Assembly: GCF_031769215.1 (NCBI RefSeq)
Contig: NW_026782115.1
Span: 620,001 to 684,000, forward strand
Direction of reading: 5' to 3'
Length of the DNA stretch: 64,000 bases
Source: Ylistrum balloti
Taxonomy: Eukaryota
The notes below the pieces were generated by a model. The model did not search any database. It was not told the origin of the DNA and worked only from the letters and a program-made list of their open reading frames with translations. The position numbers and the translations under genes were made by a program. Shown one piece after another: positions 6,127 through 61,471 of this stretch. Every line of letters starts with the position of its first letter. Position 1 is the first letter of the stretch.

Positions 6127-9100
6127 ACATAAATGGAAAGCTTCTGTGTATATTTCATCGTGTTATGATGCTATAATACGAGAGCCTGACACCTAACTCA
6201 TGCTCAGAATTTAATCCTGATATACTCAGTATCCATATTAAGGATTAACTCAGTGGCCTTCAAAGTCCCAAAGGCAACTCGAGGCTGTCAGAGATCCGCT
6301 TCCAGGATATCCAAGATCACTACCGAAGACAGTTGTATTGAACCAAAGTGCCATCACAGATAGGACGGAATCACAAGGTAGTCCTAACCAGACGTCACAG
6401 GACATTGCATATTATATGTAATAAAAAACATTGAGCTACAATCACTGCCAAAGTGAATATCATTCATTTTATCGTTAGATTGGATTATTGAGAACAATAT
6501 TTCTTTAACTGTAATATTGAAATAGAGACGGTCCAAAAGGACATGCAGAAGAAGATTAAGATTGTGATGTAGTAGTAATCTGTTGTATTATGGAGCTATG
6601 TGTGAGTGAAAGAAAGAGTCATTCCACTTAAAGACGTCAAAACGAGACATGTGCCATTATTGCTCATTGCTGCCAAGAGTGGGAGTGTTGGTACGAGAGA
6701 CAGGAACGTGACAGGAGATAAGTAGTGTGGGTTATAATGTTGATTCATACAGTCATACTGTTTATGTTAGAAAGTAAAACAAATGTTTGACATGTATTAT
6801 CGATCTGACGATAAGTATGAATGGACGGTATTTATCTGTTTGATAAGCATTATTTTGTCGATCATTTGTTATCGTATGCATGTGTTTATACCTTCAGAAG
6901 AATGTGTTTGAATGTATACGCCTAGATGTTTTTGAATGTTTAGAATGTTATCAAACCGAATGAGATCGGAACAAATAAAAAAAGTCTTAAATAAATGCCA
7001 AATGTCTTTGTTTGCTGTTTCTTCTATGAGCAATACATCATGTTATGTACCCGGAAATAATATAGGGTGATCTGAGTATTGTTAAAAAAAAGCCTATATA
7101 CGTAGGTCGATTTAAGTTCTGTAATTCTATTGTCTGAACTGAATGTCTGACAATATTTATTCGAATAACGTTGTGCAAATATGAAAGCATATATGCGTTT
7201 CTACTTTCACTCATACAACAGTAGAATAAGCAAGTAACGTGAGAAATAGAATATGTCACTATACACACATATGCAGATATGTATCATGAAGAAAAACAAA
7301 TTCTATGTAATATCAAGGAAAACATCAGAAACAATAACTAAGAAAAACATTATATACAAAAGCCCTATAGTTTTTAATACACTTTGATAATCTGTTTGTT
7401 TATACCAACAACTTTGAAGACAACCGGTAGGCGTAGGTGTAAACTGATTGTATATTTCAACTAAAATAGTGGACAATGCCATAACTCTTTATCTTTTAAA
7501 TGTGTCCCAGTATCGGTCAGTCGCAGCTTACATGCCGCAAAACTAATGTTATAATAAAAGTTCTTATAACACAACCAATAGAAGATCTGGGTGTGACGTT
7601 TTAACTACTTAGGTTAGCACTGGTAAGTTTCATATTGGTCATTTGTCTGATGAAGTTGACCATTCAATTATTTAAACGTTACACAAAAAATATATTTTAT
7701 TCTATATTAAAAATTAATTCAAAATAATAACAGCGATGACAACATCTTTTTATAGCTTGAACGTAATATGAAAATCGATCAATACCTGTTCACAAATTAA
7801 AGTCGTTAAGATGTATGTCTTCTTGTAATTTTCCAGTAAAGCTTACCATTGCAAAAGTTATTAGCTACCTCGAAAAATCACGTGACAGGCTCATGGAATT
7901 AACAATAAGAGTGAAACTCTTCTCCGATTCTAGAAGACGCCGAAAGTATATGTATATACACGATAGAAATCAACTGAGCATATATTTAAAATTTATAACT
8001 ACTTTACTACTGTACTACTAATGATGTTTACTATAAAATAGTTTGTCATTAACGAACATTTGTCTCGTTAAACGAATCACACTGGACATTGCCCGTACAT
8101 AATGCTACGTACTTACATATATATGAAAATACATTCTTACGTTCCCAAAAGTAAGTACTTTGTGCTTTTTAATTCGGAAAGATGAGACAGATACACACAT
8201 TAAACACTGTAAAAATATTTACAAGATTACATAACCCAATAACAAAGTCAATTAGACTGTAAATTCTGAGATAAATATAAGGATATCCTCCGTACTTCAA
8301 TGATGCGATATCAATGTTGATAAAGTAGAAATAACCGGACACGATTAATGAGATATCGTGTAGGGTGGTTCATTTTTCCTTTTAAGAGTCTTCAGGAGAC
8401 TATTTGAAGAAAAAAAACCAGAAAAAACGATATTAAAGATTTCCTATTTCGTCAGTTTAAACAGGAAAATGTTGATTACAAAAAAGAACCCGTGTTATTA
8501 TCTTTTATGTTTTATGACTTGGCCAGATTATGTTACTTTCCTATCATTCCTTAACCCGGACAATTGAAGTGAGGAATAGTGCACATACAATTTTGATTTA
8601 GTACACAACACACGATCATGCATGCTGCAAGGTTTATAAAATGCTAGATTTATTGTTGGAGTTTCAAATTACATATCTGGCTATTCTTATCCATAAACGG
8701 CGTCTAACATGTTGATATAACCTTTATCAAATCAAATGTAACGCAAAATACAACATTGATATAAATACTGACAGGAAACTTTTTTAGTGCACATTTTCTC
8801 TTACGAAGCAAAAAATTCATGAAATACACTGAATATTGAAATCAGATACCTTATTTTCATTAGCTACATTACCGACAGACGTAAGTAAATGCATTAGATG
8901 TCATTAAAATACACTTAAGAGATTTAGCTCTCCCAGTACCAGCCGATATATATCGGGTTTTTGACGTCAGTTATAATTACAATATGCCAAACCCCTAATT
9001 TAGCATTTTTATTCCATTTCGATATAAATTTGGATCTATCTATCAGGAAGCATTCATCACTAATTCACTTTACCTATTAATTTTATTTTGAAAAAAAGAA

Positions 9101-10702
9101 GCTCTCATATTAGTTAAAACAATTGATTAAGGTAACTTGCATTGCAACATGATATATATACAACTCACATTATGAGATGGTACATGTAATTGAGGAAGAA
9201 AACTCCTACTAATCGTGGTTGATTTGTATAAAGATAGACTGTCTTTATGTGTTGATTCACAACATTATATTGCTTTTGAGTTTTGATATACACTATCATA
9301 TACAAAAAACGGTTTGTCACTTTTAATGCGCATTTATCCGTTTCATAATAGCCAAAGATAGCATTCAACAAAATGTGTCATCACAGGAAAAGGCGGATTT
9401 CAAGTGCTATTGATGTTTATTTCTGTCTATTTACTGTCTCCTTGGTAAGCATTGTTCATTATCAAGTTATATTTGTTTTTCGGTTAACTGTTTATCAGTG
9501 ATGTGTTTTCCTGTGAGTCAGTGAAGTTACTCGAGAGAGCGTCTTTCTGCCGTTTATATATTTAATCACCAGACACAATACAACTGAACTCTCAGCCGGG
9601 TTTACCCTGAAATTTGTCACTAGCTGTTGCCATGAAATGAGGTTTACGTCAATGTCTTTACATTGCAGAAACCATACCTATGATAATGCGTGCTATGCTT
9701 TTGTGCATTAAAGTTATCTTGCCTAGTCAACTAGCTACCTTCAATGTTAAAATGGCTTCCATTTCGTAATGATAAGTTGTTGTAATGTTCTTTTTTTGTC
9801 CAAGCACAGTAATTAATTAGTTTTGTCCCTGACAAATACCCATACCCACCGTGTATAACGCTGCAGGAGAGAAATTAGCTAAGTCTTATAATTTGTCATT
9901 TATTTTCAAATTTTATCAACAATAAGTAATGTACTAATTGATCATGTTTGCTAAGGAAATCAATTAAATTTTCATTTCGTTTCAGAACATCTAATTTAGA
10001 TAAAATGAATTCCCAAGGCATTTCTGACAGGCGTTTATTTATTATAATATTCTATGATGAGATTGCATTAACTAAACATGGAGGAAAAACAAAAACATCA
10101 GAAGAATGTTCGAGGGTAAATTAAGAAAACTTTTTTTAAAAAATTAAGAAAAAGAAACAATTTACACAATTAAAAACTTTAAAGGATAGTAAGATGAGGC
10201 GTTTCAAAAGGTTAGGGGCTTCTACTTTGTCGACAATACTTCCTATGTAAAGTCATATGGTCATTCCAAGTCAGTAATGTAAGGTTGTCAAAATGAGAAG
10301 TGAGCTAATCGAGCTAGAAAGCTGCAATACTAACAATTATCAAACACAAATAACTTCAAAGACTCTCTAGGAAATAATTGATAATGATTGATATGAAAAG
10401 CAGCTTGAAAACAGTAAAATATTGGGATCTGATGAGATTTTTAACATTTTTAGACGGTTCTATTGCTGTCAGGTGAATACAAACATAAAATCCTATTTTC
10501 ACAATACTGTTAATGATAAAAATATCAGTGATAAATTGTGTAGAATCAAAAGAAAAACTCATCTTTGTGATGATCATAAAACGTTCCTAGTGTGTCCTGA
10601 AGCAGTGTTCAATTTAATAAGCGTACTACATCAATTTTCTACATGTAACAATAGTGTTAAAATGATTCATACACATGAAAGAAGCAAACAAACTGTTTAT
10701 GC

Positions 10703-10704
<2 letters not shown>

Positions 10705-10752
<48 letters not shown>
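10705..10752. repeat. (GT)19 + (AT)5 microsatellite
   Basis: Read directly from the sequence. Confidence 0.97.
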
Positions 10753-13300: not shown

Positions 13301-13911
13301 ATTTTGTTTTCATAATTTATTCAATAACAATTGTAGAGAAAAAATAACGGCACATATCAGCCTTAAAATCTAAGACTATTGTCAATATCTCACGATGTAC
13401 ATTTCATCGTGTATATCTTCCCACTTTTAAACAATAACAAGCGGTTGAATAAATCAATGTTATGTATAAATTTACAATAAGTTGTTACAGATAAATTCTG
13501 CTTGTCATTTGTATATAACATGTTTTAGAGAAAGTCTCGTCAAAACAACATGCATTGTACAATAAATCTACACAGACATAGATATAGGTCAGACAACATT
13601 AAACCAGATACATTGGTGTTATAGGTGAATGGAATGCTTTCAATTTGATTTCCAGCATAGAATTTGGAACACAATATTGAAACCATCGATTTTAAGTTGT
13701 GAATTATTAATAGTCACTGATTTAACGGTTAGAAATACGTGCGGAAAGAATGTCAATTTCACCCGTAAAAGATGAAATATACGGTATATTATCACAGATA
13801 CGTCAGTAAAGACATTTGATTTTGAAGTAAAATGTTTGTATGGTTAATTTTGGTTCTATAACCGTCGTCTGGTCGCACGTTGTTCGTTCATAACGTGTTT
13901 GCAAAAGGTAT

Positions 13912-14644: not shown

Positions 14645-14753
14645 CCTACTTAATTTTTATCAATCCTTCGACTTAAAGGAGTGTCGTAGATGCAAACATA
14701 TGCACTTGTCAGGTATTACTGTTTAAAATAACCATGCTGGCATTTTTTATTCT

Positions 14754-14761: not shown

Positions 14762-17255
14762 CCCGTTGTCTCAATCACGTGGTGCTTTGCAACATTTGTG
14801 GGCGTTGGAATACCGAACTTTAGAAACAAAGCAGCTTTTAAACACTTCTAACAGCTAAAGAGAGATCTTTTGTAGTTCATGCAAATCAGATAACATGGTA
14901 TAATGATAATATGGTATTAGTAAACAGGTATAAGGTTACAATCTATTGTTTATATAGATTAAGATCAATTATCTATGATTCATCTAAGTGTATCTACGTC
15001 TTCCATCCCTATAATGTAACACTGTGGTATCACTGGTAGCAACGCTGCGTAGGCGAAATATACGACTGCATGCCAAAATCAGTTAAAACCTACTCATGTC
15101 ATAGCCTACCTCTTTAATCTTTCAATATGAACCGCCAAAATGAGAAAACTGTCTATCAAAAGTAAATTTCTTATCGCTTTCGGAAAAAAATCGCCTTGAA
15201 ATATTTGAACGTCGCTCAATTTACACTTTGTAAAAGACATCAACTGATTGATTTTTATTGAATGTGCTTGGCACTTAGTAGCTGTAAAATAAAACATTAA
15301 ACATTTTGTTAAAAATTCGGCACCAAGACTAGTTAACTTTATTTAGCGTTAACACATTCAGCAAACAATACAAAAGTATTATCATTATGTTCGTGTTTGC
15401 AATATATTTGATTCTGACAGTTTGTCTGTATCTCTTATCATTGCTGTGTACATCGATGTATACTATTTTCCTTTAAGTTCAATGATAGTTTAAAAGCCTT
15501 ATATGGTCAAAATAACAAACATTGTTTTTTTATAAGAGAATACAATTATTAGTGTTAAGGTGTAAACACGTCCTCAGGTACGACAAGTTATCATTCATGT
15601 ATAACCTTTGCCGTTATTCTTTTGATTTTGTCTTTTGTCCTGAATGTCGCACTGTTACATTGTACCTAACATACACCAACTGTCCTTTGTATTTCATAAA
15701 TCTTCGACCTGTCCAATGTTATTTCATCAAATTATCGACTAAGGGATCTTTCAAAATAAAAGACCTGGTTTTGAACTACATCTTTACCATCACGTGCTTT
15801 GTTTACATTACATATAAGTCTACTACGACCCAGTATTCCATCATCTGATAGAACATTGTGTAACAGTTTTAAGACCTGGATTTATTGTTATAGTTCTATA
15901 TGCCATTGACATCGTGAACGGTGCTGTTTATCTTCCTGAAGATACATGTTTTAACAAACTAAAGCTACAGTGTTTTATAAAATAAGTATAATATTACTCC
16001 GTTTTGACAATGTCCCAGGTCAATACAGGATTTGCATTTCACATGGTTAGACAAAAACAGATCTTTTAATTGATAGCTCTGCATACTGTCTTTAGGCAAT
16101 GAAGAAATAAAACACGCAAACAGAATATTTAATAAATACATTTTTTTATTTTTAAAATATAATTGCACTATGCCCTTTTGCCTTTAGAAAATAACATTCA
16201 TGCAACAAATTATACTCAGTTTTACACACGATGATATTGACATTGATTGACATTCACGATCTCATTCATAAAATATGTTTCATGTACATAGCACGTTTAT
16301 CCACTGAATGCATTAAGAACACACTTAACTCAGCATATGTATGAACTTCAGTCTTCTCGTTGTTTTATTTTCTTTTCATTTAACGATTAATATGTTAATG
16401 CTAACGTGTCCTCACTTGATTTCTATAATTCCGTTAATTAAGATATCAAACGTTTATCTTGAATACATTTTCTCACACACATATACATACATTCAGGTAT
16501 AAAGTACACTACTATATTATTTTCATATAAACACCTATCGGGTATTCAGGAAATCTGAACGAAGATAAGATGAATGAAAGACTGAAATATATTAAGTGTT
16601 CGATAGATATTTGAAAACCATTGGTGGATTTTTCCTAAACGCTCTCTCCAACGTTTGCGTGCTTTAAACATAAACCTTAAGTGTGCGTCGTTTAAAGTCA
16701 TATCCTCCCTTTTAAATGTCTTGGTTGTTGTCACGATGTTAACGTTTTCCATTATTAAATGTGGAGGAACACAGTGATAAAAACTCGGAGTTTTTTTAAG
16801 TGTTATAGCACTCTCTGGTGATACTTCATCGTCCAATGTCTTCACTATTCTCATCATCAGCTCTTCCTTATACGATGCACAGATTGGTTGCGTAAACCTC
16901 TTATCGTGTTAGATGTTTGATGTTAAATTCTAGAAGAGCAGAACATCTATGGCAGAAAAATCTGAAATGACAAAAAGATTGAATATGAAATACATGTATA
17001 TCGTAACAAAGAATGTAACATTGATATACATACGTTCAATTATACCATTTATCTTATTCTTTTTTTCGCTATTCTCAAAATTCTGTTTTACACATTTCCT
17101 CATTTTCTCCATTATTCCTTCTGATATTTACCTTCATTTTTCTTCATGCTGGTTTATGTTCATATCCTATAATCGTCCTCCTATTTCAGGGACTGGCTTT
17201 CTTCAGATATAGGGTTGGTTTCATCTAGTCCTAAGGCGTCTATTGAACTCCGTTT

Positions 17256-20946: not shown

Positions 20947-23469
20947 TTAGGCACCTGACTTGCTGAGCTCTTAATCTCTCCAAAAAGAACTTTGTTATGC
21001 GAAAATTCAATCATCACCACCAGTTTCAAGATTTTACAATAGACTTATTCTTCCCTTGCTGGACAAAGGATATAACGTAATTTGGAAATGGAATTCGGGA
21101 ATATGATTAAGCGCGATTAGATATTCTGTGAGGAAACATTACTTAATTGAACATTTCAAAGAAATAGTTTTCCCGATGATGTGGACATTGTCTTTAACTT
21201 ACTCAATGGAATACGTACAGAACAGACTCTCTCCAATTGCAATGACAAACTGAGACAGAACTATAGTTCTATGACACTTGCTCAAATCTGCCATATATGT
21301 ATATCACTGTGTTCAGGTTGTGAAAAGATTAACATGTGTATGTATGTTGGAAAGTATGGTCTTTCAAATGTTAGTATGGCAGGTAGTGACACAATCCATT
21401 GTTGACGAATGTGATCATACTTCACACGCACAAAAAGCAACTCATGTCACGGCACATGTCTGCATGTGATTTTTTTCAAGAAGTGGATGAAACTTTGATA
21501 GACTATGATTTTGTATTATAGAGTCGTGTGTAAAGAACATGTAGCTTTATATTAGTACAAATGTGAAATCCGGAAAGAACAAGAAAATTCTTTCTAATTT
21601 TCAAGTGTTTAAAGAATGGCTGTGAGAAGATGTGTATAGGAATGTTTGTGTAGGGACAAAAGCAATATTTACTTTTACATTGTTACAAATATAATTAAAA
21701 TGAAAATGAATCGATTTTTTTCTTGTTTTTTGTTTTCTCTTTTTTTTATCGTGATTATCGCAGTTGGGCTGGTCATGAACAGAGAAAATCATTTCGACAT
21801 AGCTTGATAAGTAAAGAATGCGAATTACAACATCTGTGTTGTTATTTGATTCCGACAATACTGAATCTATTCTTGATAATTTCTACTCAAATAAGTTGAG
21901 TTTGATATAGCCTAAAACAGTTTTCAGAAATCGTAACATTTTACACGCACTAGGGCAGAAATAAATACAACCAAAAATTAGCTAATATATCGCGAAGTTA
22001 GTTAACTGGGATCTTTCATTAATCCATGCATTATTTTGTAGACAAAACATATAATAAGAACATTGCATTGAAAGGTACTATGCATTTGTGTAACTCTTAA
22101 ATACGGACCATGTTTAAAACGTCGTACACAAATTATATTATATATTCACTAATTCAACAAACACAATTATAGGAAATATACTAGGAAATATATTTGAATC
22201 ACCGACAGAGCAAGAAGCTTACAGACTATCAACAGTGTAGGAATTTGATGGTTTGTAGTATGAATGTTTTCAAAATAGTTTATGTAATTTGTAATATTAT
22301 GCACTTCAATGTTTTTTTTTTTTTTTTTTTTTACAACTGTTTCAATATAACACGCCATATTTGTATATAAATAACAAACAAATAGTAACGACAATATGCG
22401 GACTTTCACTGCTATGTTGTGGCAAGGAATTCATACCGAAATCTTTGTAATCTATTTCCTGTCCTGTAAGTTCTAAATGCGTCATTCATTTCACGGTTAG
22501 GAGGCGTCAAAACAGACGAGGTAGGGGATAAGATATCAATTACTGTAAGAATGGAGTAATATAGATACCTTATCAAACAACGTCTAAACAACAGACATGT
22601 AGCATTAATAATACATTGTCAGTACATTATATAGTTTCAACTTGTGCTAAATGTAATTGATATCTTCCAGGAGGTTCTTTGGTTAAGCAGCAGGTGCTTT
22701 TTATATGCAAATAATACCAACAATGTTTCGTTGCCTCTCTTGTCAATAACTTCAATTCATACCAGGTATCGTAAGGGAGGGATGTTTGATTTTATAATCG
22801 TTAATATTGATTATGTGTGTGAGGGAGATTTTTCTAAGTACCTGAAATAAACATCAATGAGATATAGTACGTTGTGTTCTTCTCTAGTTCATACACAGGG
22901 TTTTCAAATCACAAGCTCCTTATACGCACAATAAACATTATCAACGGTAACGGAAAAAACTCAACGGAGACAACAAGAAAATTTGATGACAGAATCAATC
23001 ATAAATAATGAGAGAGATACAATTTATAACTACAAAATATACTAACATTTCAGAATGTGAATGCATGCAGAATGCAGAAAGTTAAACTTACTAACCAGAC
23101 CACCAGGTGGTCGTTATTTCTAATGCTGTGCATGAAAACTTCAATCAAAATAATTTGTATTTCTTACTACAATCAAATAGGAGGTCTTGTCTATTTTAGC
23201 ATTTCTAGTTTTAGGTTAGCATATACTATTGCGCATTTTATTGAGTATTACTTAACGGCAATGCTAAATTTGCGTATGTATGTAGTGACCAAGAATATCT
23301 ATTATTTTCGGGGTGATCTGTTTTAAAACATGCTAAAAAAAACACGCATTTTATTCATTCATTCTGTTCAGAGAAAAAAATGCATGTTTCCTATAACATC
23401 GTATGTTGATTGCGATCAGCATTTTTGAGAATATAGCAATTACTGTAAAATTGCAATAATATTGGTGTC

Positions 23470-24176: not shown

Positions 24177-26681
24177 TTCATTTGGTTTAATAGAACAGTT
24201 TACGACTTGTTGAACTCTCAACGAATATGATTATAACAAAGAAAAGAAAAAAACATTTAACGATCATCGAATCACCAATAGTAGTCCCACAACCTCATGA
24301 TTCTTCCCTTGCTGGACAAAGGATATAACGTAATTTGGAAATGGAATTCGGGAATATGATTAAGCGCGATTTGATATTCTGTGAGGAAACATTACTTAAT
24401 TGAATATTTCAAAGAAATAATTTTCCTGATGATCTGGACATTGTATTTAACTTATTCAATGGAATACGTACAAAACAGACTCTTTCCAATTGGAATGACA
24501 AACTGAGACAGAACTATAGTTCTATGACACTTGCTCAAATCTGCCATATATGTATATCACTGTATTCAGGTTGTGAAAAGATTAACATGTGTATGTATGT
24601 TGGAAAGTATGGTCTTTCAAATGTTAGTATGGCAGGAAGTGACACAATCCATTGTTGACGAATGTGATCATACTTCACACGCACAAAAAGCAACTCATGT
24701 CACGGCACATGTCTGCATGTGATTTTTTTTCAAGAAGTGGATGAAACTTTGATAGACTATGATTTTGTATTATAGAGTCGAGTGTAAAGAACCTGTAGCT
24801 TTATATTAGTACAAATGTGAAATCCGGAAAGAACAAGAAAATTCTTTCTAATTTTCAAGTGTTGAAAGAATGGCTGTGAGAAGATATGTATAGGAATGTT
24901 TGTGTAGGGACAAGAGCAATATTTACTTTTACATTGTTACAAATATAATTAAAATAAAAATGAATCGATTTTTTTCTTGTTTTTTGTTTTCTCTTTCTTT
25001 TTATCATGATTATCGCAATTGGGCTGGTCATGAACAGAAAATCATTTCGACATAGCTTGATAAGTAAAGAATGCAAATTGCAACATCTGTGTTGTTATTT
25101 GATTCCATCAATCGTGAATCCATTCTTAAGAATTTCTACTCAAATAAGTTGAGTTTGATATAGCCTAAAACAGTTTTCAGAAATCGTAACATTTTACATG
25201 CACTAAGGCAGAAATAAATATAACCAAAAATTAGCTAATATATTGCGAAGTTAGTTAACTGGGATCTTTCATTAATCCATGCATTATTTTGTAGACAAAA
25301 ATCAAATAAGAACATTGCATTGAAAGGTACTGTGCATTTGTGTAACTCTTAAATACGGACCATATTTAAAACGTCGTACACAAATTATATTATATATTCA
25401 CTAATTCAATAAACACAATTATAGGAAATATACTAGGAATTATATTTGGATCACCGACAGAGCAAGAAGCTTACAGACTATCAACAGTGTAGGAATTTGA
25501 TGGTTTGTAGTATGAATGTTTTCAAAATAGTTTATGTAATTTGTAATATTATGCACTTCAATGTTTTTTGTTTTACAACTGTTTCAATATAACACACCAT
25601 ATTTGTATATAAATAATAAACAAATAGTAACGACAATATGCGGACTTCACTGCTATGTTGTGGCAAGGAATTCATGTCGAAATCTATGTAATCTATTTCC
25701 TGTCCTGTAAGTTCTAAATGCGTCATTCATTTCACGGTTAGGAGGCGTCAAAACAGACGAGGTAGGGGATAAGATATCAATTACTGTAAGAATGGATTAA
25801 TATAGATACCTTATCAAACACGGTGTAAACAACAAACATGTAACATTAATAATACATTGTCAGTACATGATATAGTTTCAACTTGTGCCAAATGTAATTG
25901 ATATCTTCCAGGAGGTTCTTTGGTTAAGCAGCGGGTGCTTTTTATATGCAAATATACCAGCAATCTTTCGTTGCCTCTCATGTCAATAACTTCAATTCAT
26001 ACCAGGTATCGTAAGGGAGGGATGTTTGATTTTATAATCGTTAATATTGATTATGTGTGTGAGGGAGATTTTAGAAATGTACCTGAAATAAACATCAATG
26101 AGATATAGTACGTTGTGTTCTTCTCTAGTTCATACACATGGTTTCCAAATCTCAAGCTCCTTATACGCACAATAAACATTATTAACGGTAACGGAAAAAA
26201 CTCAACGGAGACAACAAGAAAATTTGATCACATAATCAATCATAAATAATGAGACAGATACAATTTATAACTACAAGATATACTAACATTTCAGAATGTG
26301 AATGCATGCAGAATGCAGAAAGTTAAACTTACTAACCAGACCACCAGGTGGTCGTTATTTCTAATGCTGTGCGTGAAAACTTCAATCAAAATAATTTGTA
26401 TTTCTTACTACAATAAAATAGGAGGTCTTGCCTATTTAGTTTTAGTTTTAGATAACAGCATATACTATTTCGCATTTTATTGATAATGCTAAATTTGCGT
26501 ATGTATGTAGTGACCAAGAATATATTTATTATTGATCTGTGTTAAATATAAAAGCACGCATTTTATTCATTCATTCTGTTCAGAAAAAACATGTTTCCTA
26601 TAACATCGTATATTGAAAGCGATAGCAGCATAATTTTTGAAAATATAGCAATTACTGTAAAATTGCAGTAATATTGGTGTC

Positions 26682-27402: not shown

Positions 27403-29921
27403 TTCATTTGGTTTAATAGAACAGTTTACGACTTGTTGAATTCTCAACGAATATGATCATAACAAAGAAAAGAAAAAAACATTTAACGATCATCGAATCA
27501 CCAATAGTAGTCCCACAACCGCATGATTCTTCCCTTGCTGGACAAAGGATATAGCGTAATTTGGAAATGGAATTCGGGAATATGATTAAGCGCGATTAGA
27601 TATTCTGTGAGGAAACATTACTTAATTGAATATTTCAAAGAAATAGTTTTCCTGATGATCTGGACATTGTCTTTAACTTATTCAATGGAATACGTTCAAA
27701 ACAGACTCTCTCCAATTGCAATGACAAACTGAGACAGAACTATAGTTCTATGACACTTGCTCAAATCTGCCATATATGTATATCACTGTGTTCAGGTTGT
27801 GAAAAGATTAACATATGTATGTATGTTGGAAAGTATGGTCTTTCAAATGTTAGTATGGCAGGTAGTGACACAATCCATTGTTGACGAATGTGATCATACT
27901 TCACACGCACAATAAGCAACTCATATCACGGCACATGTCTGCATGTGATTTTTTTCAAGAAGTGGATGAAACTTTGATAGACTATGATTTTGTATTATAG
28001 AGTCGAGTGTAAAGAACATGTAGCTTTATATTAGTACAAATGTGAAATCCGGAAAGAACAAGAAAATTCTTTCTAATTTTTCAAGTGTTTAAAGAATGGC
28101 TGTGAGAAGATATGTATAGGAATGTTTGTGTAGGGACAAAAGCAATATTTACTTTTACATTGTTACAAATATAATTAAAATGAAAATGAATCGATTTTTC
28201 TTGTTTTTTGTTTTCTCTTTCTTTTTTGTCATGATTATCGCAGTTGGTCTGGTCATGAACAGAAAATCATTTCGACATAGCTAGATTAGTACAGAATGCA
28301 AATTGCAACATCTGTGTTGTTATTTGATTCCATCAATCGTGAATCCATTCTTAAGAATTTCTACTCAAATAAGTTGAGTTTGATATAGCCTAAAACAGTT
28401 TTCAGAAATCGTAACATTTTACATGCACTAAGGCAGAAATAAATATAACCAAAAATTAGCTAATATATTGCGAAGTTAGTTAACTGGGATCTTTCATTAA
28501 TCCATGCATTATTTTGTACACAAAAATCAAATAAGAACATTGCATTGAAAGGTACTATGCATTTGTGTAACTCTTAAATACGGACCATATTTAAAACGTC
28601 GTACACAAATTATATTATATATTCACTAATTCAATAAACACAATTATAGGAAATATACTAGGAAATATATTTGAATCACCGACAGAGCAAGAAGCTTACA
28701 GACTATCAACAGTGTAGGAATTTGATGGTTTGTAGTATGAATGTTTTCAAAATAGTTTATGTAATTTGTAATATTATGCACTTCAATGTTTTTTGTTTTA
28801 CAACTGTTTCAATATAACACACCATATTTGTATATAAATAACAAACAAATAGTAACGACAATATGCGGACTTTCACTGCTATGTTGTGGCAAGGAATTCA
28901 TGTCGAAATCTATGTAATTTATTTCCTGTCCTGTAAGTTCTAAATGCGTCATTCATTTCACGGTTAGGAGGCGTCAAAACGGACGAGGTAGGGGATAAGA
29001 TATCAATTACTGTAAGAATGGATTAATATAGATACCTTATCAAACACGGTGTAAACAACAAACATGTAACATTAATAATACATTGTCAGTACATTATATA
29101 GTTTCAACTTGTGCCAAATGTAATTGATATCTTCCAGGAGGTTCTTTGGTTAAGCAGCAGGTGCTTTTTATATGCAAATAATACCAGCAATGTTTCGTTG
29201 CCTCTCTTGTCAATAACTTCAATTCATACCAGGTATCGTAAGGGAGGGATGTTTGATTTTATAATCGTTAATATTGATTATGTGTGTGAGGGAGATTTTA
29301 GAAAAGTACCTGAAATAAACATCAATGAGATATAGTACGTTGTGTTCTTCTCTAGTTCATACACATGGTTTTCAAATCTCAAGCTCCTTATACGCACAAT
29401 AAACATTATTAACGGTAACGGAAAAAACTCAACGGAGACAACAAGAAAATTTGATCACACAATCAATCATAAATAATGAGACAGATACAATTTATAACTA
29501 CAAGATATACTAACATTTCAGAATGTGAATGCATGCAGAATGCAGAAAGTTAAACTTACTAACCAGACCACCAAGTGGTCGTTATTTCTAATGCTGTGCG
29601 TGAAAACTTCAATCAAAATAATTTGAATTTCTTACTACAATAAAATAGGAGGTCTTGCCTATTTTTAGCTTTTCTAGTTTTAGGTTAGCATATACTATTT
29701 CGCATTTTATTGATAATGCTAAATTTGCGTATGTATGTAGTGACCAAGAATATATTTATCATTTTGGGGTGATCTGTGTTAAGACATACTAAAAGCACGC
29801 ATTTTATTCATTCATTCTGTTCAGAGAAAAAATACATGTTTCCTATAACATCGTATATCGATTGCGATCAGCATTTTTGAGAATATAGCAATTACTGTAA
29901 AATTGCAGTAATATTGGTGTC

Positions 29922-30622: not shown

Positions 30623-32919
30623 TCCATTTGGTTTAATAGAACAGCTTACGACTTGTTGAACTTTCAACGAAAATGATCATAACACAGAAAAAAACTTTTT
30701 ACGATCATCGGATCACCAATAGTAGTCCCACAACCTCATGATTCTTCCCTTGCTGGACAAGGATTAATTGTGATTACGATATGAACGAAGTGGCATATTC
30801 TTAGGAAAATGAGTCGGTGTTGAAACTTTGATAAACATCGAAAGTTTGTTACCGATAATTATAACAACATTTCGTTCAAACGCATACGGTATTCCTTTAA
30901 CGGAATAAGAGATGTAGACTATGAAACATTTGCCCAATTCTGCCAGACATTTCTAACGATGTGTTCAGAGTAAAATGATGAGTATATGAAGTATGTAACA
31001 ATAGTGTAATATTAGGTTTTAGTATATGATAAGTGTGTACAAGAGATTGGGAAGGGAAAGTTGCAATACTTTTTTACATTGTTATAAAAATGATTAAAAT
31101 AAAGATGAAAGAAATTCTGATATTCTTGTTATCTGTTACCGCATAATTATTGCAATGATAGCTGACCAACGGCAGCAGAAGAGAACCATAGAAACACGGC
31201 TTCAAATACATTTCCTGATTTCATTTCATAATCCAGAGTATCTCTCAACGCTTCCTGTGATTAATAATTACTTCAGGCAATTTGTTCTGACTGTTGTATG
31301 TTATCTCTTCTAAGGCCAATAGTTGAGACATTCAACACATATTAGATGAAATAATAAATGTTTTTTCTTTAAACAATATCAAATTCGGCTTAAACAATGA
31401 ACGAAAAATCTTCTTTTCTATTTAAAAGCTCTATTGAATATCAGATTCTAAAGTTCATCCTAAGCATGAACACTATTCTAGCTAATAATCGAGAATAGGA
31501 CATGGAATATATCGCGCTAGAATTACATTGCTTTGTTCGGGCCCAGATTTGTTATATTTGATACGTGCTTGTTACACAATATGCTTCATAAGCCATATAC
31601 ATTATAGTTTCACTTGCATTGCAACAAACACACTAACTGCAGCACAAAAACGTATATTTCGAACATCTAAACTATCAATTTCATTATATATGCAGAAACA
31701 ACAGGACCCATAAAACCGTCAAAAGAAATGATATTGTGTTGCTCTGTGTAAATAGACACTCAAATATATTCTTTTTATTATAGATCATGAACTCATTACA
31801 ATTCCGTTACAAAACAATGTTTATTCTTATATGAATCATTGTAAAATAATGACAATTTTGAACTCTCGTTTGTATGTAGTGGGAAATATTCTTTTGTTAT
31901 GTATCAAGGATGTCGTCTCCTGTCATATTAGAAACATGAACGTCATATAATTCATGTTGTCTAGTTTAAAAACCTCGGACGCAGGGCGGGAGAGGGGGGA
32001 CATATCAATAACTGTAGGATTGTAATAATACAGATACCTTATCTAACACCATCTATACAATTGATAATTAACAATGGTAATACATTGACAATATCAGATC
32101 TATAATGACACAATTCCGTATGTAACTGATCTCTCCACGGAGGCTCCTGGCTAAAACAACAGGTGGCTTTTATAAGACATTACCAACCCACAGTCCTTCG
32201 TCGCTTCTTCGTTATTAAGGACTTCAATTGATTCAAGAGGAGAAAACCACGACATGCTCATTTTCACCATTGCGGGAAGGACGTTGGTTTCAAAGCCGTA
32301 ACTACAGAACATGTGTGTAATGATGATCCAAATAAAATAAACGTCAAGCCTAAATGAGTTTTTGTTGTTATCTGTATAATACCCTTTCTTGTCACGTCAT
32401 GTGCCATCATACCCAAAGAAAACATTATTAACAGTAACAGAAGCAAATCGGAGGAGGTAACATTAACGGACCTATTTTGGGATTTGATGATATAATCAAT
32501 CACAATTTGAAATGGAACGAGACAGATACCACGCATGAATAACAAACTTACATAGTGCAGGTTAAGAATGGGAGTAGAAAGTGAACACCGTCAACTGAAA
32601 GGTCATTCGGACGCTTTACACTAAAACAACGACCTTGCCTAATATTATACTCTCCGGTTTTAAGATAACAGCTACGTTTACGTAATTGATTGGACGCTAA
32701 ATTAGACAGAGCTGAACTGACATCTGTAGTTAGTGAGTAAAAGTATTCGTTTGTATTGATCTGCTGTATAAATATCAAAGCATGCATATCATGCATTCAT
32801 TGTGTGCTGAATAAAAACGACCCGTTTCCTGGTACGCCATACATAAATTCCGAAAAGCAATAGCACATAACTTTTGGTGAAAATTTCAATCATCGTTAAA
32901 TGGCAGTAACATTGGCATC

Positions 32920-33673: not shown

Positions 33674-35715
33674 TTCATTTGGTTTAATAGAACAGTTTAC
33701 GACTTGTTGAACTCTCAACGAATATGATCATAACAAAGAAAAGAAAAAAACATTTAACGATCATCGAATCACCAATAGTAGTCCCACAACCTCATGATTC
33801 TTCCCTTGCTGGACAAAGGATATAGCGTAATTTGGAAATGGAATTCGGTAATATGATTAAGCGCGATAAGATATTCTGTGAGGAAACATCACTTAATTGA
33901 ACATTTCAAAGAAATAGTTTTCCTGATGATCTGGACATTGTCTTTAACTTATTCAATGGAATACGTACAAAACAGACTCTCTCCAATTGCAATGACAAAC
34001 TGAGACAGAACTATAGTTCTATGACACTTGCTCAAATCTGCCATATATGTATATCACTGTGTTCAGGTTGTGAAAAGATTAACATATGTATGTATGTTGG
34101 AAAGTATGGTCTTTCAAATGTTAGTATGGCAGGTAGTGACACAATCCATTGTTGACGAATGTGATCATACTTCACACGCACAAAAAGCAACTCATGTCAC
34201 GGCACATGTCTGCATGTGATTTTTTTCAAGAAGTGGATGAAACTTTGATAGACTATGATTTTGTATTATAGAGTCGTGTGTAAAGAACCTGTAGCTTTAT
34301 ATTAGTACAAATGTGAAATCCGGAAAGAACAAGAAAATTCTTTCTAATTTTCAAGTGTTTAAAGAATGGTTGTGAGAAGATGTGTATAGGAATGTTTGTG
34401 TAGGGACAAAAGCAATATTTACTTTTACATTGTTACAAATATAATTAAAATGAAAATGAATCGATTTTTTTCTTGTTTTTTGTTTTCTCTTTTTTTATCA
34501 TGATTATCGCAGTTGGGCTGGTCATGAACAGAGAAAATCATTTCGACATAGCTTGATAAGTAAAGAATGCGAATTACAACATCTGTGTTGTTATTTGATT
34601 CCGACAATACTGAATCTATTCTTGATAATTTCTACTCAAATAAGTTGACTTTGATATAGCCTAAAACAGTTTTCAGAAATCGTAACATTTTACACGTACT
34701 AGGGCAGAAATAAATACAACAAAAATTAGCTAATATATCGCGCAATTAGTTGACTGGGATCTTTCATTAATCCATGCATTATTTTGTACACAAAACATCT
34801 AAATAAGAACTTTGCATTGAAAGGTACTATGCATTTGTGTAACTCTTAAATACAGACCATATTTACAAACGTCGCAAACAAATTATATTATATATTCACT
34901 AATCCAATAAACACACTTATAGGAAATATACTAGGAAATATATTTGAATCACCGACAGAGCAGGAAGCTTACAGACTATCAACAGTGTAGGAATTTGATG
35001 GTTTGTAGTATGAATAATTTCAAAATAGTTGATGTAATTTGTAATATTATGCACTTCAATGTTTTTTGTTTTACAACTGTTTCAATATAACACACCATAT
35101 TTGTATATAAATAACAAACAAATAGTGACGACAATATGCGGACTTTCACTGCTATGTTGTGGCAAGGAATTCATATCGAAATCTTTGTAATCTATTTCCT
35201 GTCCTGTAAGTTCTAAATGCGTCATTCATTTCATGGTTAGGAGGCGTCAAAACAGACGAGGTAGGGGATAAGATATCAATTGATAACTACAAGGTATACT
35301 AACATTTCAGAATGTGAATGCATGCAGAATGCAGAAGGTAAACTTACTAACCAGACCAAGTAATTGTTATTTCTAATGCTGTGCATGAAAAATTCAATCA
35401 AAATAATTTGTATTTCTTACTACAATAAAATAGGAGGTCTTGTCTATTTTAGCATTTCTAGTTTTAGGTTAACAGATACTATTGCGCATTTTATTGAGTA
35501 TTACTCAACGGCAATGCTAAATTTGCGTATGTATGTAGAGACCAAGAATATCTATTATTATCGGGTTGATCTGATTTAAAACATGCTAAAAACACGCATT
35601 TTGTTCATTCTGTTCAGAGAAAAAAATACATGTTTCCTAGAACATCGTATATCGATTGCGATCAGCATTTTTGAGAATATAGCAATTACTGTAAAATTGC
35701 AGTAATATTGGTGTC

Positions 35716-36415: not shown

Positions 36416-39040
36416 TTCATTTGGTTCAATAGAACAGTTTACGACTTGTTGGACTCTCAACGAATAGTATCATGACTCAGAAAAAGAAACATTTTTACGA
36501 TCAACGTATCACCAACACTAGTCTCACAACCTCGTGGTTCTTCCCTTGCTGGACAAGGATTAATTATGGTTTAGAAATAAACATACTGACAGGTTTTTAT
36601 GAAGAGGATTCGGCGTTGAAATATTGATAAACATCGAAAGTTTGTTACCAATGATATATCAATTTCTTCAATCGAAGCAAAAACACTTTTCAAACTTATT
36701 CGTTGTTTCCATTACGTTACAAGGAGACACCGTTTGTCAATTAAATGACATTCGCCTAATACTGCCAGACATTTCTTTCAATGTGTTCACAGGGCATAGA
36801 TGTGTATGAAAGTTGGAACATTTGCGTAACGTCTATATGAAGTGTTTGATAAGAAAATACACGCAGTAGTTACATATTTGAGTGATGAGGAGAGTAAATA
36901 ATTCTTCATATCAATGTATATCTTTGATAAAAATGGCATTGTATAATCGTATGGAAATTAATTGTCTAATGTTATAATCAATGTGTAAGTGGAATGCAGA
37001 AGTAGAACATAATTTATAAACTTAATTCTAGTCTAAAAGATTAAAGTCAACAAATGAGCACAAAAGCGAAAGTGAAGGGAATGTTGCAATACCTATATAC
37101 ATTGTTACAAATTTAAATAAAAATTTAAGGAACCTTTATATTCTTGTGTTTTTATTGTACGCATGATTATCGAACTGTTTGCTGATCAATGGCGACTGAA
37201 GAAAACGAAAGAAAACCATTTTTTTATTTCAATACTTATAATCCAGAATATCCTTCAACACTTCCCATTATTAATGTTTATTTCAACCAGTTGGTTCTAG
37301 CTGTTTGTATCTTATATATTCAAAATTCTTCAGTTGAGACATTTGTCCCATTTGAGAGATATAATGAGGATATATTGATGGAAGTTTATACTCAGTATTT
37401 TATTTTGTAGTAGCTAATCATCGATAGTGTGCATAATAAATATTTGATTTGTTCGAACCTAAATTAGATAGATTTGATGCAGGCTTGACGTACAACATGT
37501 CTCACAAAATACACGCACATTATAACTTCACTAGCATTGCAATAACTATTGAATATTTAAACTAATAGTCAACTTATAGGGCACCATATGTCAACAGATA
37601 TTTCTTATATTATCATTCTCGCTGACCTTTGTGTCATTACAGTTTCCATTTTAAAACAACCTTTATATTACTATATCAATCATTGTAGGGGTAATTCACG
37701 ACAGTGCTTGACTTTCGCTGGTAGTGGCATCCACTTTATGTTGATATATTTGGGTTATCGTTGACTGCCGTATAAGAAACATGAATTTTATGTATTTCAT
37801 GGTGTCCAATGTAAAAACATAGGGAGCGGGGGATCTTATCAATAACTGTAATATTGCAGTGATACTTTATCAAACACAATCTACACAATAGACATGTAAA
37901 AATAGTAACTCATTGTCAGTTAATCATAAACAGGCAACCCATTCCACATGTAATTGATCTCTACCCGGAGTCAAGTTTCGCAAGATATAAACTACCCGCA
38001 ACGTAAAGTTCCATCATACAATAACTGCGAAATTAAAACTTCTAAGAAATTACTGCAAAATAACGACAGGAAACATTATCACTCCTCGGGAAAAAAACAA
38101 AAACGGTACCATTTCGTTTTCGATCGCAACATCATTACATGTAGAATATGACGTCAGCATTTTCGGAATAATCTTTCTCGTTTTCTAACAAAGATTACTT
38201 TCCGATTTTCTTTTTTGAGCTTAAAAATGTAGGATAAAGAACATTGAAGTTAGATGTCAATTTTGTTCAAACAATGTCTGTTTAGTTCTAACTTTGCATA
38301 TATCATAATTGTGGAATGTAAACGACGATTATTGGAAAACACTTATCCATATATCTTTAAATATTAATCATGAAAAAAATGTAATGTACGAATTTGAACT
38401 ATTATTACATTTTTATCACTGGCCATTTAAATATAATGAGTATCTAAAATGTTTAAATATCTAAACCATGGGCTTCTATTAAATACATAGATTACATATA
38501 TTTTTTGTCAGATAGCTTTCAGATGCATATATAAACATTCTACATTGTTAGCCAGAAACAACTAAATGTGTAACAAAATTGCCTATACAAACCTAAACTT
38601 AATGAAAGGAATCTCATAAATCATTTTGATAGTCATGGTGCGTCAGGCATACATATCTGTTACTTGTATCTCGTTTAAAGCACATTACTAACTTTATTTC
38701 AAATTACAAATAACATTTGACCGAAGCACAGCAATTTTATTCATATTGCAAATAATATTAATAACGTCATTACGTAAACCAAAAAGCAAAAGAATGCTAA
38801 TTGACTAATATCTCATAATTCTTGCAATTACACACATTATAACGGAAAATAAATTGTCATCTTAATAGAAGTACTGTAAAGGGATCCACGAAATTGTACC
38901 CCAGAACAAGTACAAGGTAACCAGTACCAAGTAGCACTGGTATTTCCTTCTGTCATGTCACGGATATTTCATTTCTTTAATTCCAGGTGTCTTGGTCTAT
39001 GCAGGAGAACCTACTGAATAAGGTTGGAATCCTGCGTTAG

Positions 39041-56720: not shown

Positions 56721-56992
56721 TCGTCCTTCTATATGCAGTGCCGCTAGGTGCCTAATTGATGTAAATATGAGGCAAGTAAGTAAAATTAAATTTTGTCAAA
56801 CCAAATCGTCGCTATGCATTATTTATTTTTCCCAAAAATAAATTTCAAACTTATCTCCTTTTGTTTTAAGTAAGGTTCATAACTAAAGCGTGTAGTAATG
56901 TTTTCCTTGTTTCCTTGATTTTATATGCAAAACATTCTTACTTCGTTTTTTTTTTTTTTTTTTTTAACACGAAATATATTTAGGTGTACATA

Positions 56993-59763: not shown

Positions 59764-59952
59764 CACCTGACACAGACGTCTACCTGTCACATGTGTAACC
59801 GACTCCAATCCGATGGTACGTATTTTCTACACCAGGTGTTTTATAAAGAGGTGTGTACTCGACCGGCAAATTTATACACCTACAATGACGTTAGGAAGCC
59901 ATTCATACGAACAGAGTATAAAACACAGCGAAAACATAAGTTACAGTCATTC
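59764..59952 (+). promoter_or_regulatory. g12 promoter
   Basis: CACCTG 59764, TACCTG 59781, TGTAACCGA 59794-59802, CAGGTG 59833, TATAAAA 59917-59923, TCATTC 59947-59952. Confidence 0.62.
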
Positions 59953-60012
59953 TTATCGAGACAGCGAACTGTAAACTTGGCTATCCGTGATTGTATTCCT
60001 TAACATACTAAC

Positions 60013-60931
60013 ATGACGTCCGTGGTGATATCAGCATCCGTCAGCGACAGAATCAATGAAGCGCTGGCAACGCTAAAAACAGAAATGGTATGTATTAATT
60101 TTTATATATTGTAGAGTTTTTTTGTGAAATCTTTTTAAACATATAGTGTTTACATAAGTTTCCAATTTTTTTTTTTTTTTTTTTTTGTCGTTCGTAAATT
60201 TTGTATTACATCCATATAGAAATATCATTAATCAATGTTTCTCTTTTATAATCAAGGTGAATTTGAGACAACAAGATGTCCACTTGATGAAGCAGTTGAT
60301 TGGTATAAACGATACTATACAGAAACTATCCAAACAGCGACCCGGTTCACATAGTCCACATAAGGAGAAATTCACGATACCAAACGGACGACGAACGTTC
60401 GTAAACAAGACTGAATCCATCCCTGAAGAGACCCCCCTTGTCCGCCAACAAAGTGTTCCTAACTACTGTACAATGAACGGCAGCCTCAACGGATCTCTCT
60501 CCAGCATTGAAGGTAATTCAAATTAATAACTCTAATTGACACGAAGTCATCTTAAATAACTTAAATTTTAATTTTTGATTTTAATTTTAAATTTTTATTT
60601 AGTTTTAATGAAAAGTGAATTTGATCTACTAATTAAGTGTGCAAGAATGATAAAAACAAATGAATTCTAATGAACCTATTTTAACATATATTGTATCTCC
60701 CTTTCAGATGTCTGCAGTTCTCTGGAAGACCTAAGTGCAGCTGAATCAGATAGTGATGACAATTTGTTTGGTTCCGATCAAAACCTTAGCGAGTCTTTCT
60801 CGTCCACCACCTCCAGGTCACGATCAGTAGCGAACACTTCAAAGGAATCTGACCTAGACTATTGTTCTTACGAGCAAATCCTGAGAAGAAACATTAAGTT
60901 GTGGAAATTCTCTCGGACGCAACAACATTGA
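60013..60931 (+). CDS. g12: LURAP-domain protein, long 3-exon form, 184 aa (exons 60013-60087, 60257-60512, 60708-60931)
   Basis: MTSVVISASVSDRINEALATLKTEM|VNLRQQDVHLMKQLIGINDTIQKL...SLNGSLSSIE|DVCSSLEDLSAAESDSDD...YEQILRRNIKLWKFSRTQQH*. GT-AG introns, phases 0 and 1. 555 nt. Confidence 0.88.
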
Positions 60932-61471
60932 TATATATTGTATTCAAAGTTTACAATTATCGGAAAATCATTCCGGGAATATTGTATTTATGAATTGTTA
61001 AATATATGTGTTCATTTGGTAACAAATCTGATCTCAAAGTGCTGACAGAATTGCAAAACGTCACAGACAATTGTACAGTCCTTACACAGTGGGATTTGCT
61101 TTCCCACGGGGCTCTAATCAGTGAACGGAAACGGGAAAAAAACTGTGACGACAAACTTTGCAAATCTTGTTTCCATAAGTGATTATCAACCACGAGAACA
61201 GAAAATAATGACCAAACACATTTGTCTTTAAACCTGTTGAAACTTTGCTCAATCTGCCTAAAATTATGTTGTGTTCTGCTTGTATTCCTTTACAATGTCT
61301 TTCAGAGAGTGTGATTTTTAATCCATTGAATGATGGTGAAATTCAGTGTATGTTTGAATGTTGTGATATTAACGACATTGCTTGGTCATTCTTTGACCGT
61401 GTCATTGAGATATACATGTATTTATACAAATAGCAATAATGTAGACTTTCGACTAATTAGTGGTTGATAAT

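What the first reader, a model, noticed from the sequence alone, without database searches (positions are those of the whole stretch)
6443..61276. Positionally conserved 3'-UTR element (TCTGCCA..TGTGTTC) about 280-345 nt after the stop codon in all paralogs
Otherwise unalignable 3' flanks retain a TTGCY(S)AAHTCTGCCA-N10-17-TGTGTTC-like block. Positions: g3 16956-16950 (-), g4 21287, g5 24540, g6 27766, g7 30939, g8 34037, g9 36761 (ACTGCCA), g10 40310, g11 48987, g12 61253 (TCTGCCT), g1 6443 (CACTGCCAAAG, core only), g2 ~13593 (-) (TCTGACCTA, degenerate). The distance from the stop stays at ~280-345 nt even between long and truncated genes. In g11 the block folds into a clear hairpin (GCTGAAC-TCTG loop CAGA-GTTCCAGC), but this fold is not obviously shared. 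Inference: a selected post-transcriptional element (RNA-binding-protein or miRNA site, or a stability/localisation signal).
Basis: partly seen in the sequence, partly recalled or inferred. Interest (0 to 1): 0.7.

Follow-up and report, generated by a model that had tools for sequence, protein, structure and literature searches.

The report
Conserved microRNA-site block in scallop 3' UTRs
A short sequence block about 300 bases after the stop codon of a family of small scallop genes has been kept in four scallop genera, and its never-changing seven letters are the exact pairing site of the microRNA miR-317, so it is most likely an ordinary but well-preserved microRNA control site.

Summary
The window comes from the scallop Ylistrum balloti. 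It holds 12 small LURAP/FAM89-like genes.

**Observation.** The block ACATTTGCYSAAH-[T/A]CTGCC[A/T]-N6-14-TGTGTTC is real at nine of the twelve genes, g4 to g12, 281-363 nt after the stop.
- A profile built only from three other scallop genera finds exactly these nine sites in the window and nothing else.
- After collapsing to four independent lineages, the ordered pair TCTGCC...TGTGTTC never appears in 4000 controls.
- The claimed sites of g1, g2 and g3 are degenerate or misplaced.

**Conservation.** The same block sits 239-399 nt after the stop in 20 of 28 non-redundant family members from four genera. It lies midway between the stop and a conserved AATAAA. No shared fold exists.

**Reading.** TGTGTTC is the most widely shared heptamer in these flanks (17 of the 22 tallied; 28 sense occurrences against 1 antisense in all 28). 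It equals the seed match of miR-317. TTGCTCA matches miR-87 and TGCCAAA matches miR-96b within subfamilies. The universal CTGCC core is unexplained.

**Gap.** Spliced Argopecten transcripts show an 871-nt 3' UTR only for the g1 type.

This scan earlier noted a similar case, miR-1986 sites in another gene of this genome. I rate this a new member of a known kind, of moderate interest.

The parts
21273..21314 (+). g4 element (GACACTTGCTCAAA-TCTGCCA-N14-TGTGTTC), 340 nt after the stop at 20946
   Evidence: (E 9.6e-07)
24526..24567 (+). g5 element. The heptamer is broken by one change (TGTATTC).
   Evidence: (E 6.9e-05)
27752..27793 (+). g6 element, identical to g4
   Evidence: (E 1.2e-06)
30925..30966 (+). 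g7 element (TTTGCCCAAT-TCTGCCA-N14-TGTGTTCA)
   Evidence: (E 2e-05)
34023..34064 (+). g8 element, identical to g4 and g6
   Evidence: (E 1.2e-06)
36747..36788 (+). g9 element (TTCGCCTAAT-ACTGCCA-N14-TGTGTTCA). ACTGCCA is also a miR-34 7mer-A1 match.
   Evidence: (E 0.0026)
40296..40333 (+). g10 element (TTTGCTGAAC-TCTGCCAAA-N-TGTGTTC), 319 nt after the stop at 39990
   Evidence: (E 2e-10)
48973..49010 (+). g11 element (CAGCTGAAC-TCTGCCAAA-N-TGTGTTC), 281 nt after the stop at 48705
   Evidence: (E 4e-06)
61239..61276 (+). g12 element (TTTGCTCAA-TCTGCCT-N10-TGTGTTC), 321 nt after the stop at 60931. Kept in the orthologues of three other genera.
   Evidence: (E 5.2e-06)
61007..61013 (+). Second TGTGTTC in the g12 3' flank, 76 nt after the stop. 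Present at 73-86 nt in all four genera.
16767..16773 (-). g3: the likelier homologue of the heptamer (TATCACTGTGTTCC), 483 nt after the stop. The upstream islands have decayed.
6657..6700 (+). g1: second block ATTGCTCATTGCTGCCAAGAGTGGGAGTGTTGG. Its TTGCTCA is invariant in four genera, but it has no TGTGTTC.
   Evidence: (E 0.45)
13586..13600 (-). g2: degenerate remnant (TCTGACC), orthologous to TCTGCCAAAT...TTGTGTTT in Mizuhopecten
40701..40706 (+). AATAAA of g10, conserved in the g10/g11-type orthologues. It is the inferred poly(A) signal, 391 nt after the element.
61818..61823 (+). AATAAA of g12, aligned with the AATAAA of three orthologues. It is the inferred poly(A) signal.

Best explanation
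The block is a cluster of short linear recognition sites in the middle of the 650-900-nt 3' UTRs of a scallop LURAP/FAM89-like gene family. It was inherited from the family's ancestor and has been kept by purifying selection.

Its invariant heptamer UGUGUUC is a canonical seed site for miR-317, pairing with nucleotides 2-8. In the two-exon subfamily it is an 8mer, UGUGUUCA. miR-317-loaded Argonaute would bind there and lower translation or stability of the mRNA.

The neighbouring islands, 6-14 nt upstream, add further sites:
- UUGCUCA, a miR-87 seed match, in the two-exon and g12 subfamilies and in the second block of the g1 type.
- UGCCAAA, a miR-96b seed match, in the g10/g11 subfamily.
- ACUGCCA, a miR-34 match, in scattered copies.

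This spacing is the one known to allow cooperative action of neighbouring sites (my own knowledge of the miRNA literature, not tested here).

Shown here: the block, its conservation, its lack of structure and the exact seed matches. Inferred: that it lies in the mRNA of these genes, and that the microRNAs act on it. The universal CUGCC core is not explained by any microRNA I could check.
For: 1. The element is present in 20 of 28 non-redundant family members from Ylistrum, Mizuhopecten, Pecten and Argopecten, 239-399 nt after the stop.
2. In the 15-sequence alignment the only fully invariant run is TGTGTTC. The columns directly beside it vary.
3. An unbiased count of all heptamers in 22 non-redundant flanks ranks TGTGTTC first, at 17 of 22. 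That is above AATAAAA at 15 and above the maximum of 15 in 200 shuffles. TTGCTCA and TCTGCCA each reach 11 with 0 antisense.
4. There are 28 sense against 1 antisense occurrences in 19.9 kb of flank. From the window background I estimate about 2 expected.
5. [quoted passage not shown]
6. A table of 89 mollusc mature miRNAs contains nt 2-8 matches to three of the roughly 20 heptamers of the block consensus: miR-317, miR-87 and miR-96b. By my calculation about 0.1 would be expected by chance.
7. A second TGTGTTC is conserved in all four g12 orthologues.
8. There is no conserved fold and no Rfam family.
9. Conservation continues to a conserved AATAAA and then ends.
10. Spliced Argopecten transcripts of the g1-type gene carry an 871-nt 3' UTR that ends in poly(A) 15 nt after that AATAAA.
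Against:
- miR-317 was not located in the Ylistrum genome, and its co-expression with these genes is unknown.
- The best-conserved part of the upstream half, CTGCC[A/T], matches no miRNA seed in the table consulted.
- Island A keeps TTGC..AA while its two central letters vary between subfamilies. That fits a degenerate protein site better than one miRNA seed.
- g1-type genes lack TGTGTTC altogether, and g2-type genes have lost the composite element (Yb g2 keeps only a stray TGTGTTC at +239), yet both keep long conserved UTRs.
- One distant bivalve homologue shows no such element in its transcripts.
Confidence: 0.6

Rival explanations
1. The block is a platform for sequence-specific RNA-binding proteins rather than microRNAs. 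One candidate is a factor reading two YGCY motifs (UGCY in island A, UGCC in island B). A UGU-reading factor on UGUGUUC would then control localisation, stability or translation.
For: - Island A varies in just the way YGCY allows. UGCU, UGCC or CGCC occurs in 16 of 20 copies, and UGCC occurs in island B in 19 of 20 (my count on the rows).
- CTGCC has no seed match in the miRNA table.
- The motif is linear and unstructured.
- The sense bias fits any RNA-level reader.
Against: - Complete invariance of all seven letters of TGTGTTC in 20 copies, with variable neighbours, is more typical of base-pairing than of protein recognition.
- Exact coincidence with three conserved miRNA seeds is unlikely by chance.
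- The link to YGCY-binding or UGU-binding proteins rests on my memory of those families, not on a test.
Confidence: 0.2
2. The block acts on DNA as transcription-factor sites, for example a bZIP-like TTGC..AA half-palindrome. It would be an enhancer or boundary that was duplicated together with each gene.
For: - The block shows short islands with variable spacers, as in enhancers.
- TTGCnnAA resembles C/EBP-type sites (from memory, not tested).
- In the tandem array the block lies 2-3 kb upstream of the next copy.
Against: - Additional independent TGTGTTC copies all lie on the sense strand, 28 against 1.
- The block always lies between the stop and a conserved poly(A) signal, including in g12, which has no downstream paralogue.
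- Island A does not meet the consensus I recalled at its fifth position.
Confidence: 0.08
3. The block is a cleavage and polyadenylation site. Cleavage would fall at the CA of CTGCCA, and TGTGTTC would be the GU-rich downstream element (classical consensus YGTGTTYY).
For: - TGTGTTC[T/C/A] fits YGTGTTYY (my knowledge of that consensus), and it lies 6-14 nt after a CA.
- In g9 an ATTAAA lies about 20 nt upstream, and in g1 an AATAAA lies about 25 nt upstream of the claimed core.
Against: - 18 of 20 copies have none of 12 common poly(A)-signal variants in the 40 nt upstream.
- Strong conservation continues for 320-425 nt to a conserved AATAAA.
- Argopecten g1-type transcripts read through both g1-type blocks to a poly(A) tail at +871.
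Confidence: 0.05
4. The block is residual homology without function: a slowly decaying patch left over from the gene duplications.
For: A single ungapped 20-mer across four collapsed lineages of the window is not significant.
Against: - All subfamilies are present in four genera, so the duplications are older than those genera. Yet the heptamer is invariant in 20 copies while the flanking UTR is unalignable between subfamilies.
- The ordered pair test gives 0 of 4000 controls.
Confidence: 0.03

Closest known systems
Canonical animal microRNA seed sites (7mer-m8 and 8mer) in 3' UTRs, here for miR-317, a conserved protostome microRNA
   Same: Perfect complement to nucleotides 2-8. Conservation falls off immediately outside the heptamer. 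The site is on the sense strand only, lies between the stop and the poly(A) signal, occurs in a second copy in some UTRs, and has neighbouring seed matches at cooperative spacing.
   Different: The target relation has not been described. The site is kept across a whole paralogue family rather than in one gene. It is fused to a CTGCC core that matches no microRNA I could check.
miR-1986 site cluster in the scallop four-jointed-like 3' UTR
   Same: Conserved, strand-specific microRNA seed matches in a scallop 3' UTR that recur in other scallop genera.
   Different: A different gene and a different microRNA. That case has five repeated 8mers of one microRNA. This one is a single composite block with different candidate sites, shared by paralogues. 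I did not re-test that finding.
GU-rich downstream element of poly(A) sites (YGTGTTYY)
   Same: The sequence TGTGTTC[Y] lies a few bases after a CA dinucleotide.
   Different: There is no upstream poly(A) signal in 18 of 20 copies. Conservation and, in the g1 type, transcripts continue far downstream.
Clustered YGCY / UGU-rich protein-binding modules in 3' UTRs (MBNL- and CELF-type sites)
   Same: Two YGCY motifs 7-8 nt apart, followed by a UGU-containing motif. The module is linear and unstructured.
   Different: The resemblance is recalled, not tested. The full heptamer invariance and the conserved TTT and AA around island A go beyond those motifs.

Membership tests
microRNA target site (miR-317) | Watson-Crick complement to miRNA nucleotides 2-8 | tested here: met
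   TGTGTTC is the reverse complement of GAACACA, which is nt 2-8 of UGAACACAGCUGG.... It is invariant in 20 copies.
microRNA target site (miR-317) | Site lies within the mature mRNA, usually the 3' UTR | tested here: inconclusive
   It lies between the stop and a conserved AATAAA, with no poly(A) signal upstream in 18 of 20 copies. Transcripts exist only for the g1 type.
microRNA target site (miR-317) | Preferential conservation of the seed match over flanking UTR | tested here: met
   It is the top heptamer in 22 flanks and the only invariant run in alignment A2. It is kept in the orthologues of four genera.
microRNA target site (miR-317) | The microRNA exists and is expressed in the organism | tested here: inconclusive
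   It is reported in all eight molluscs of one survey, including the scallop M. yessoensis. It was not located or measured in Ylistrum balloti.
microRNA target site (miR-317) | Repression that depends on the seed match | not testable with these tools
   This needs a reporter or Argonaute CLIP experiment.
poly(A) site with GU-rich downstream element | AAUAAA-type hexamer 10-30 nt upstream of the cleavage site | tested here: not met
   None of 12 hexamer variants occurs within 40 nt upstream in 18 of 20 copies.
poly(A) site with GU-rich downstream element | Transcripts end at the site | tested here: inconclusive
   g1-type transcripts read through to +871. There are no data for g4-g12.
structured cis-regulatory RNA element | Shared helices supported by compensatory changes | tested here: not met
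   The RNAalifold consensus energy is -0.01 kcal/mol, with two trivial pairs and no covariation. The two candidate helices hold only in the g10/g11 subfamily. There is no Rfam match.
LURAP / FAM89 protein family (the host genes) | Match to Pfam PF14854 above the curated cut-off | tested here: inconclusive
   The exon-2 ORFs score 16-22 bits against a cut-off of 25. The full annotated proteins carry precomputed PF14854 hits, and one oyster homologue is named leucine rich adaptor protein 1-like.

The most novel reading that the evidence does not exclude
The block is a composite, family-wide control module. An unidentified factor reads the universal CUGCC core and works together with miR-317. Each subfamily has then swapped the third partner (miR-87, miR-96b or miR-34) by one or two point changes in the same 20 nt. 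If so, paralogues that differ little in protein are told apart mainly by which microRNA combination silences them.
Probability: 0.2. Interest if true: 0.6.

Novelty: new member of a known kind. Interest (0 to 1): 0.42.

Why it matters
Experimentally usable microRNA-target pairs are scarce in molluscs. This case offers an unusually clean one. A single invariant seed match has been kept in some twenty paralogues and orthologues of four scallop genera, and natural loss-of-site variants exist for comparison: g5, the g1 type and the g2 type.

It also gives a handle on an uncharacterised, scallop-expanded LURAP-like gene family, and on how tandem duplicates may diverge in regulation rather than in protein. 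It is not a new principle. Conserved seed sites in 3' UTRs are textbook.

Tried and rejected
- **Sequencing runs.** The question whether the element is in the mRNA is therefore answered only indirectly.
- **Single-block significance.** An ungapped 12-, 16- or 20-mer star alignment over four collapsed lineages was not significant. The two-block test was.
- **My first idea,** that the block is the cleavage site plus a GU-rich downstream element, was rejected. There is no upstream hexamer, conservation runs on to a distal AATAAA, and g1-type transcripts read through.
- **A hidden downstream exon or splice site** was rejected. The annotated proteins end at the stops used here, and the block has no reading frame conserved across subfamilies.
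- **Hairpin models** (GAACA:TGTTC and GAAC:GTTC) were rejected.
- **A microRNA beginning UGGCAGA or AGGCAGA** that would explain TCTGCCA was not found, either in the Biomphalaria table or in the mollusc literature.
- **Conservation beyond scallops.** Transcripts of one distant bivalve homologue (L013-L017) lack the element.
- **Spliced models.** Annotated proteins from the database were used instead.
- **The N run** at 63623-63755 was left alone.

Full report
**What the window is.** The window is AT-rich (about 33% G+C) and has no ORF of 150 codons or more. It holds twelve copies of a short exon encoding ...DLRQQDVxLMKQLxxINDxIQxL.... This exon matches Pfam LURAP (PF14854) just below threshold.

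A word search returned the annotated proteins. They show the genome is the scallop Ylistrum balloti, and that orthologues exist in Mizuhopecten yessoensis, Pecten maximus and Argopecten irradians.

The family has five types, each present in several genera:
- a long three-exon type, g1;
- a 141-145-aa type, g2;
- a two-exon type of 99-108 aa, g3 to g9;
- a truncated three-exon type of about 129 aa ending ...NH, g10 and g11;
- a second long type, g12.

The database proteins served as gene models.

**Checking the observation.** The stops are at 6126, 13912(-), 17256(-), 20946, 24176, 27402, 30622, 33673, 36415, 39990, 48705 and 60931. The claimed cores lie 281-363 nt after them.

The exact two-part pattern occurs six times against none expected, and three more copies differ by one letter.

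Because g4, g6 and g8 are identical in the block, I tested the motif in three ways that do not lean on them.
1. A profile built only from nine blocks of the three other genera finds nine hits in the 64-kb window (E 2e-10 to 2.6e-3). These are exactly g4 to g12, on the gene strand, and nothing else scores below E 0.3.
2. With only g6, g10, g11 and g12, a single ungapped block is not significant. However, TGTGTTC is the only heptamer common to all four flanks. The ordered pair TCTGCC...TGTGTTC is found in none of 2000 shuffles and none of 2000 sets of intergenic pieces.
3. Among all heptamers in 22 non-redundant flanks, TGTGTTC is the most widely shared, at 17 of 22. That is more than AATAAAA, and more than any heptamer in 200 shuffles.

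The three remaining claims do not hold as stated.
- **g3.** The TCTGCCA at 16956 looks like chance. The stretch that aligns with the g4 type is at 16767-16810 on the minus strand and keeps TATCACTGTGTTC.
- **g2.** The site is a decayed orthologue of TCTGCCAAAT-N8-TTGTGTTT in Mizuhopecten.
- **g1.** The site is loosely kept in Pecten and Argopecten, is polymorphic within Argopecten, and never has TGTGTTC. The g1 type has a second, better-kept block (window 6657-6700) whose TTGCTCA is invariant in four genera.

**Related sequences.** I fetched the loci of 16 further family members from the other three genera. Of 28 non-redundant genes, 20 carry [T/A]CT[G/A]CC[A/T]-N6-14-TGTGTTC, 239-399 nt after the stop. 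The exceptions are the four g1-type genes, the two g2-type genes, Yb g3 and one Argopecten copy.

In the g12, g10/g11, two-exon and g1 types the 3' flanks of orthologues align in a series of islands. These islands run from the stop to a conserved AATAAA or ATTAAA 540-890 nt downstream, and conservation then ends.

The element sits roughly in the middle, 320-425 nt before that signal. It is the only island shared by the two-exon, g10/g11 and g12 types. It is not the only one shared between subfamilies, though. A block TTGTTAT(C/T)GACAACAGTC near the poly(A) signal is common to the g2 and g10/g11 types.

The only direct evidence comes from five Logan contigs of Argopecten RNA runs. They carry the spliced g1-type coding sequence followed by up to 878 nt. 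One of them ends in a poly(A) run that begins 15 nt after the AATAAA at +854, where the genome reads on differently. So for that type the long conserved flank is a real 3' UTR.

For the genes that carry the full element the location is inferred, from three facts:
- a conserved distal poly(A) signal;
- absence of any of 12 hexamer variants in the 40 nt upstream of the block in 18 of 20 copies;
- strand bias.

**What it is.** The 15-sequence alignment (A2) has one fully invariant run, TGTGTTC, and the neighbouring letters on both sides vary. In addition the G of TTGC, one A of the AA that follows, and C, T, C and C of CTGCC are invariant.

RNAalifold finds no shared fold (-0.01 kcal/mol). The two helices one might draw hold only in the g10/g11 type, and they show uncompensated changes elsewhere. 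Rfam has no match in the window. The element is therefore a set of linear motifs.

TGTGTTC is the reverse complement of GAACACA, which is nucleotides 2-8 of miR-317. The mature miR-317 sequence is printed for three species:
- a crustacean (PMC3309017);
- the bivalve Tegillarca granosa (PMC3972184);
- the snail Biomphalaria glabrata (PMC7328434).

One survey found miR-317 and miR-87 in all eight molluscs studied, including the scallop M. yessoensis (PMC11067994).

All two-exon genes have an A after the heptamer, which makes it an 8mer site.

TGTGTTC occurs 28 times on the sense strand of the 28 flanks, and its complement occurs once. Extra copies include one 73-86 nt after the stop in all four g12 orthologues.

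I looked up the reverse complements of the other heptamers of the block consensus in the Biomphalaria table of 89 mature miRNAs.
- UGAGCAA is nt 2-8 of miR-87, so the site is TTGCTCA. This is kept in the two-exon and g12 types and in the g1 type's second block.
- UUUGGCA is nt 2-8 of miR-96b, so the site is TGCCAAA. This is kept in every g10/g11-type gene.
- The variant ACTGCCA is a 7mer-A1 match to miR-34.
- Nothing matches TCTGCCA.

With at most 89 seeds among 16384 heptamers, I calculate that about 0.1 of some 20 heptamers should match by chance. Three do.

**Most likely mechanism.** The block is a conserved cluster of microRNA sites in the 3' UTR, with miR-317 as the common partner and subfamily-specific neighbours, acting through Argonaute-mediated repression (confidence 0.6). 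The universal CTGCC core and the TTGC..AA frame of island A are not explained by this. They may belong to a protein site, which is the main rival (0.2). A DNA-level role (0.08), a poly(A) site (0.05) and functionless residual homology (0.03) fit the data poorly.

**Comparison and novelty.** This is a new instance of a well-known kind of element. An earlier follow-up in this scan reported conserved miR-1986 sites in another gene of the same genome. I did not re-test it.

What is less common here is that the site has been retained across a whole, anciently duplicated family. Natural variants have lost it: g5 with TGTATTC, the g1 type and the g2 type. The neighbouring 20 nt appear to have switched candidate partners between subfamilies.

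Noticed in passing
window 12549-13288: A tandem array of 41-nt units, 13 or more copies, with strong GC skew, directly downstream of the g2 poly(A) signal. On the minus strand it reads as His/Gln/Pro/Thr-rich repeats.
   Followed up: no
window about 61440-61472 and L001-L003: A 30-nt block, ATGTAGACTTTCGAC.AATTAGTGG..GATAA, in the g12 3' flank is almost invariant in four scallop genera. It is better kept than the element under study.
   Followed up: no
window about 61480-61800: A Ylistrum-specific tandem repeat of about 23 nt (GTGTGAATGTGTACAGAACATTA-like) has expanded inside the g12 3' flank, between the conserved block and the AATAAA. It is absent from the three orthologues.
   Followed up: no
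window about 6620-6990; L007, L018, L019: The distal 350 nt of the g1-type 3' UTR is roughly 80-90% identical across four genera (judged by eye from the alignment), far above the proximal half. It holds repeated TATCGAT and TGTTATCG motifs.
   Followed up: partly
window 40640-40700 and 49300-49360; My_2 in L018: A block TTGTTAT(C/T)GACAACAGTC...GACTG just before the poly(A) signal is shared by the g2 and g10/g11 types. The 3' flanks therefore share more than one island.
   Followed up: partly
window 24561-24567: g5 is the only tandem copy whose heptamer is broken (TGTATTC). Whether g5 is still a working gene was not checked.
   Followed up: no
L008-L012 against L007, 300-325 nt after the stop: Argopecten transcripts from different runs differ from the genome at the g1-type site: ACTGCCA or ACTGTCA, and TTTGCTG, CTTGCTG or TTTCCTG. 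This suggests relaxed constraint there.
   Followed up: partly
L020 5553-5607 and 8287-8341: Two further strong matches to the element profile lie in Pecten maximus where no gene is called. They are probably unannotated two-exon copies.
   Followed up: no
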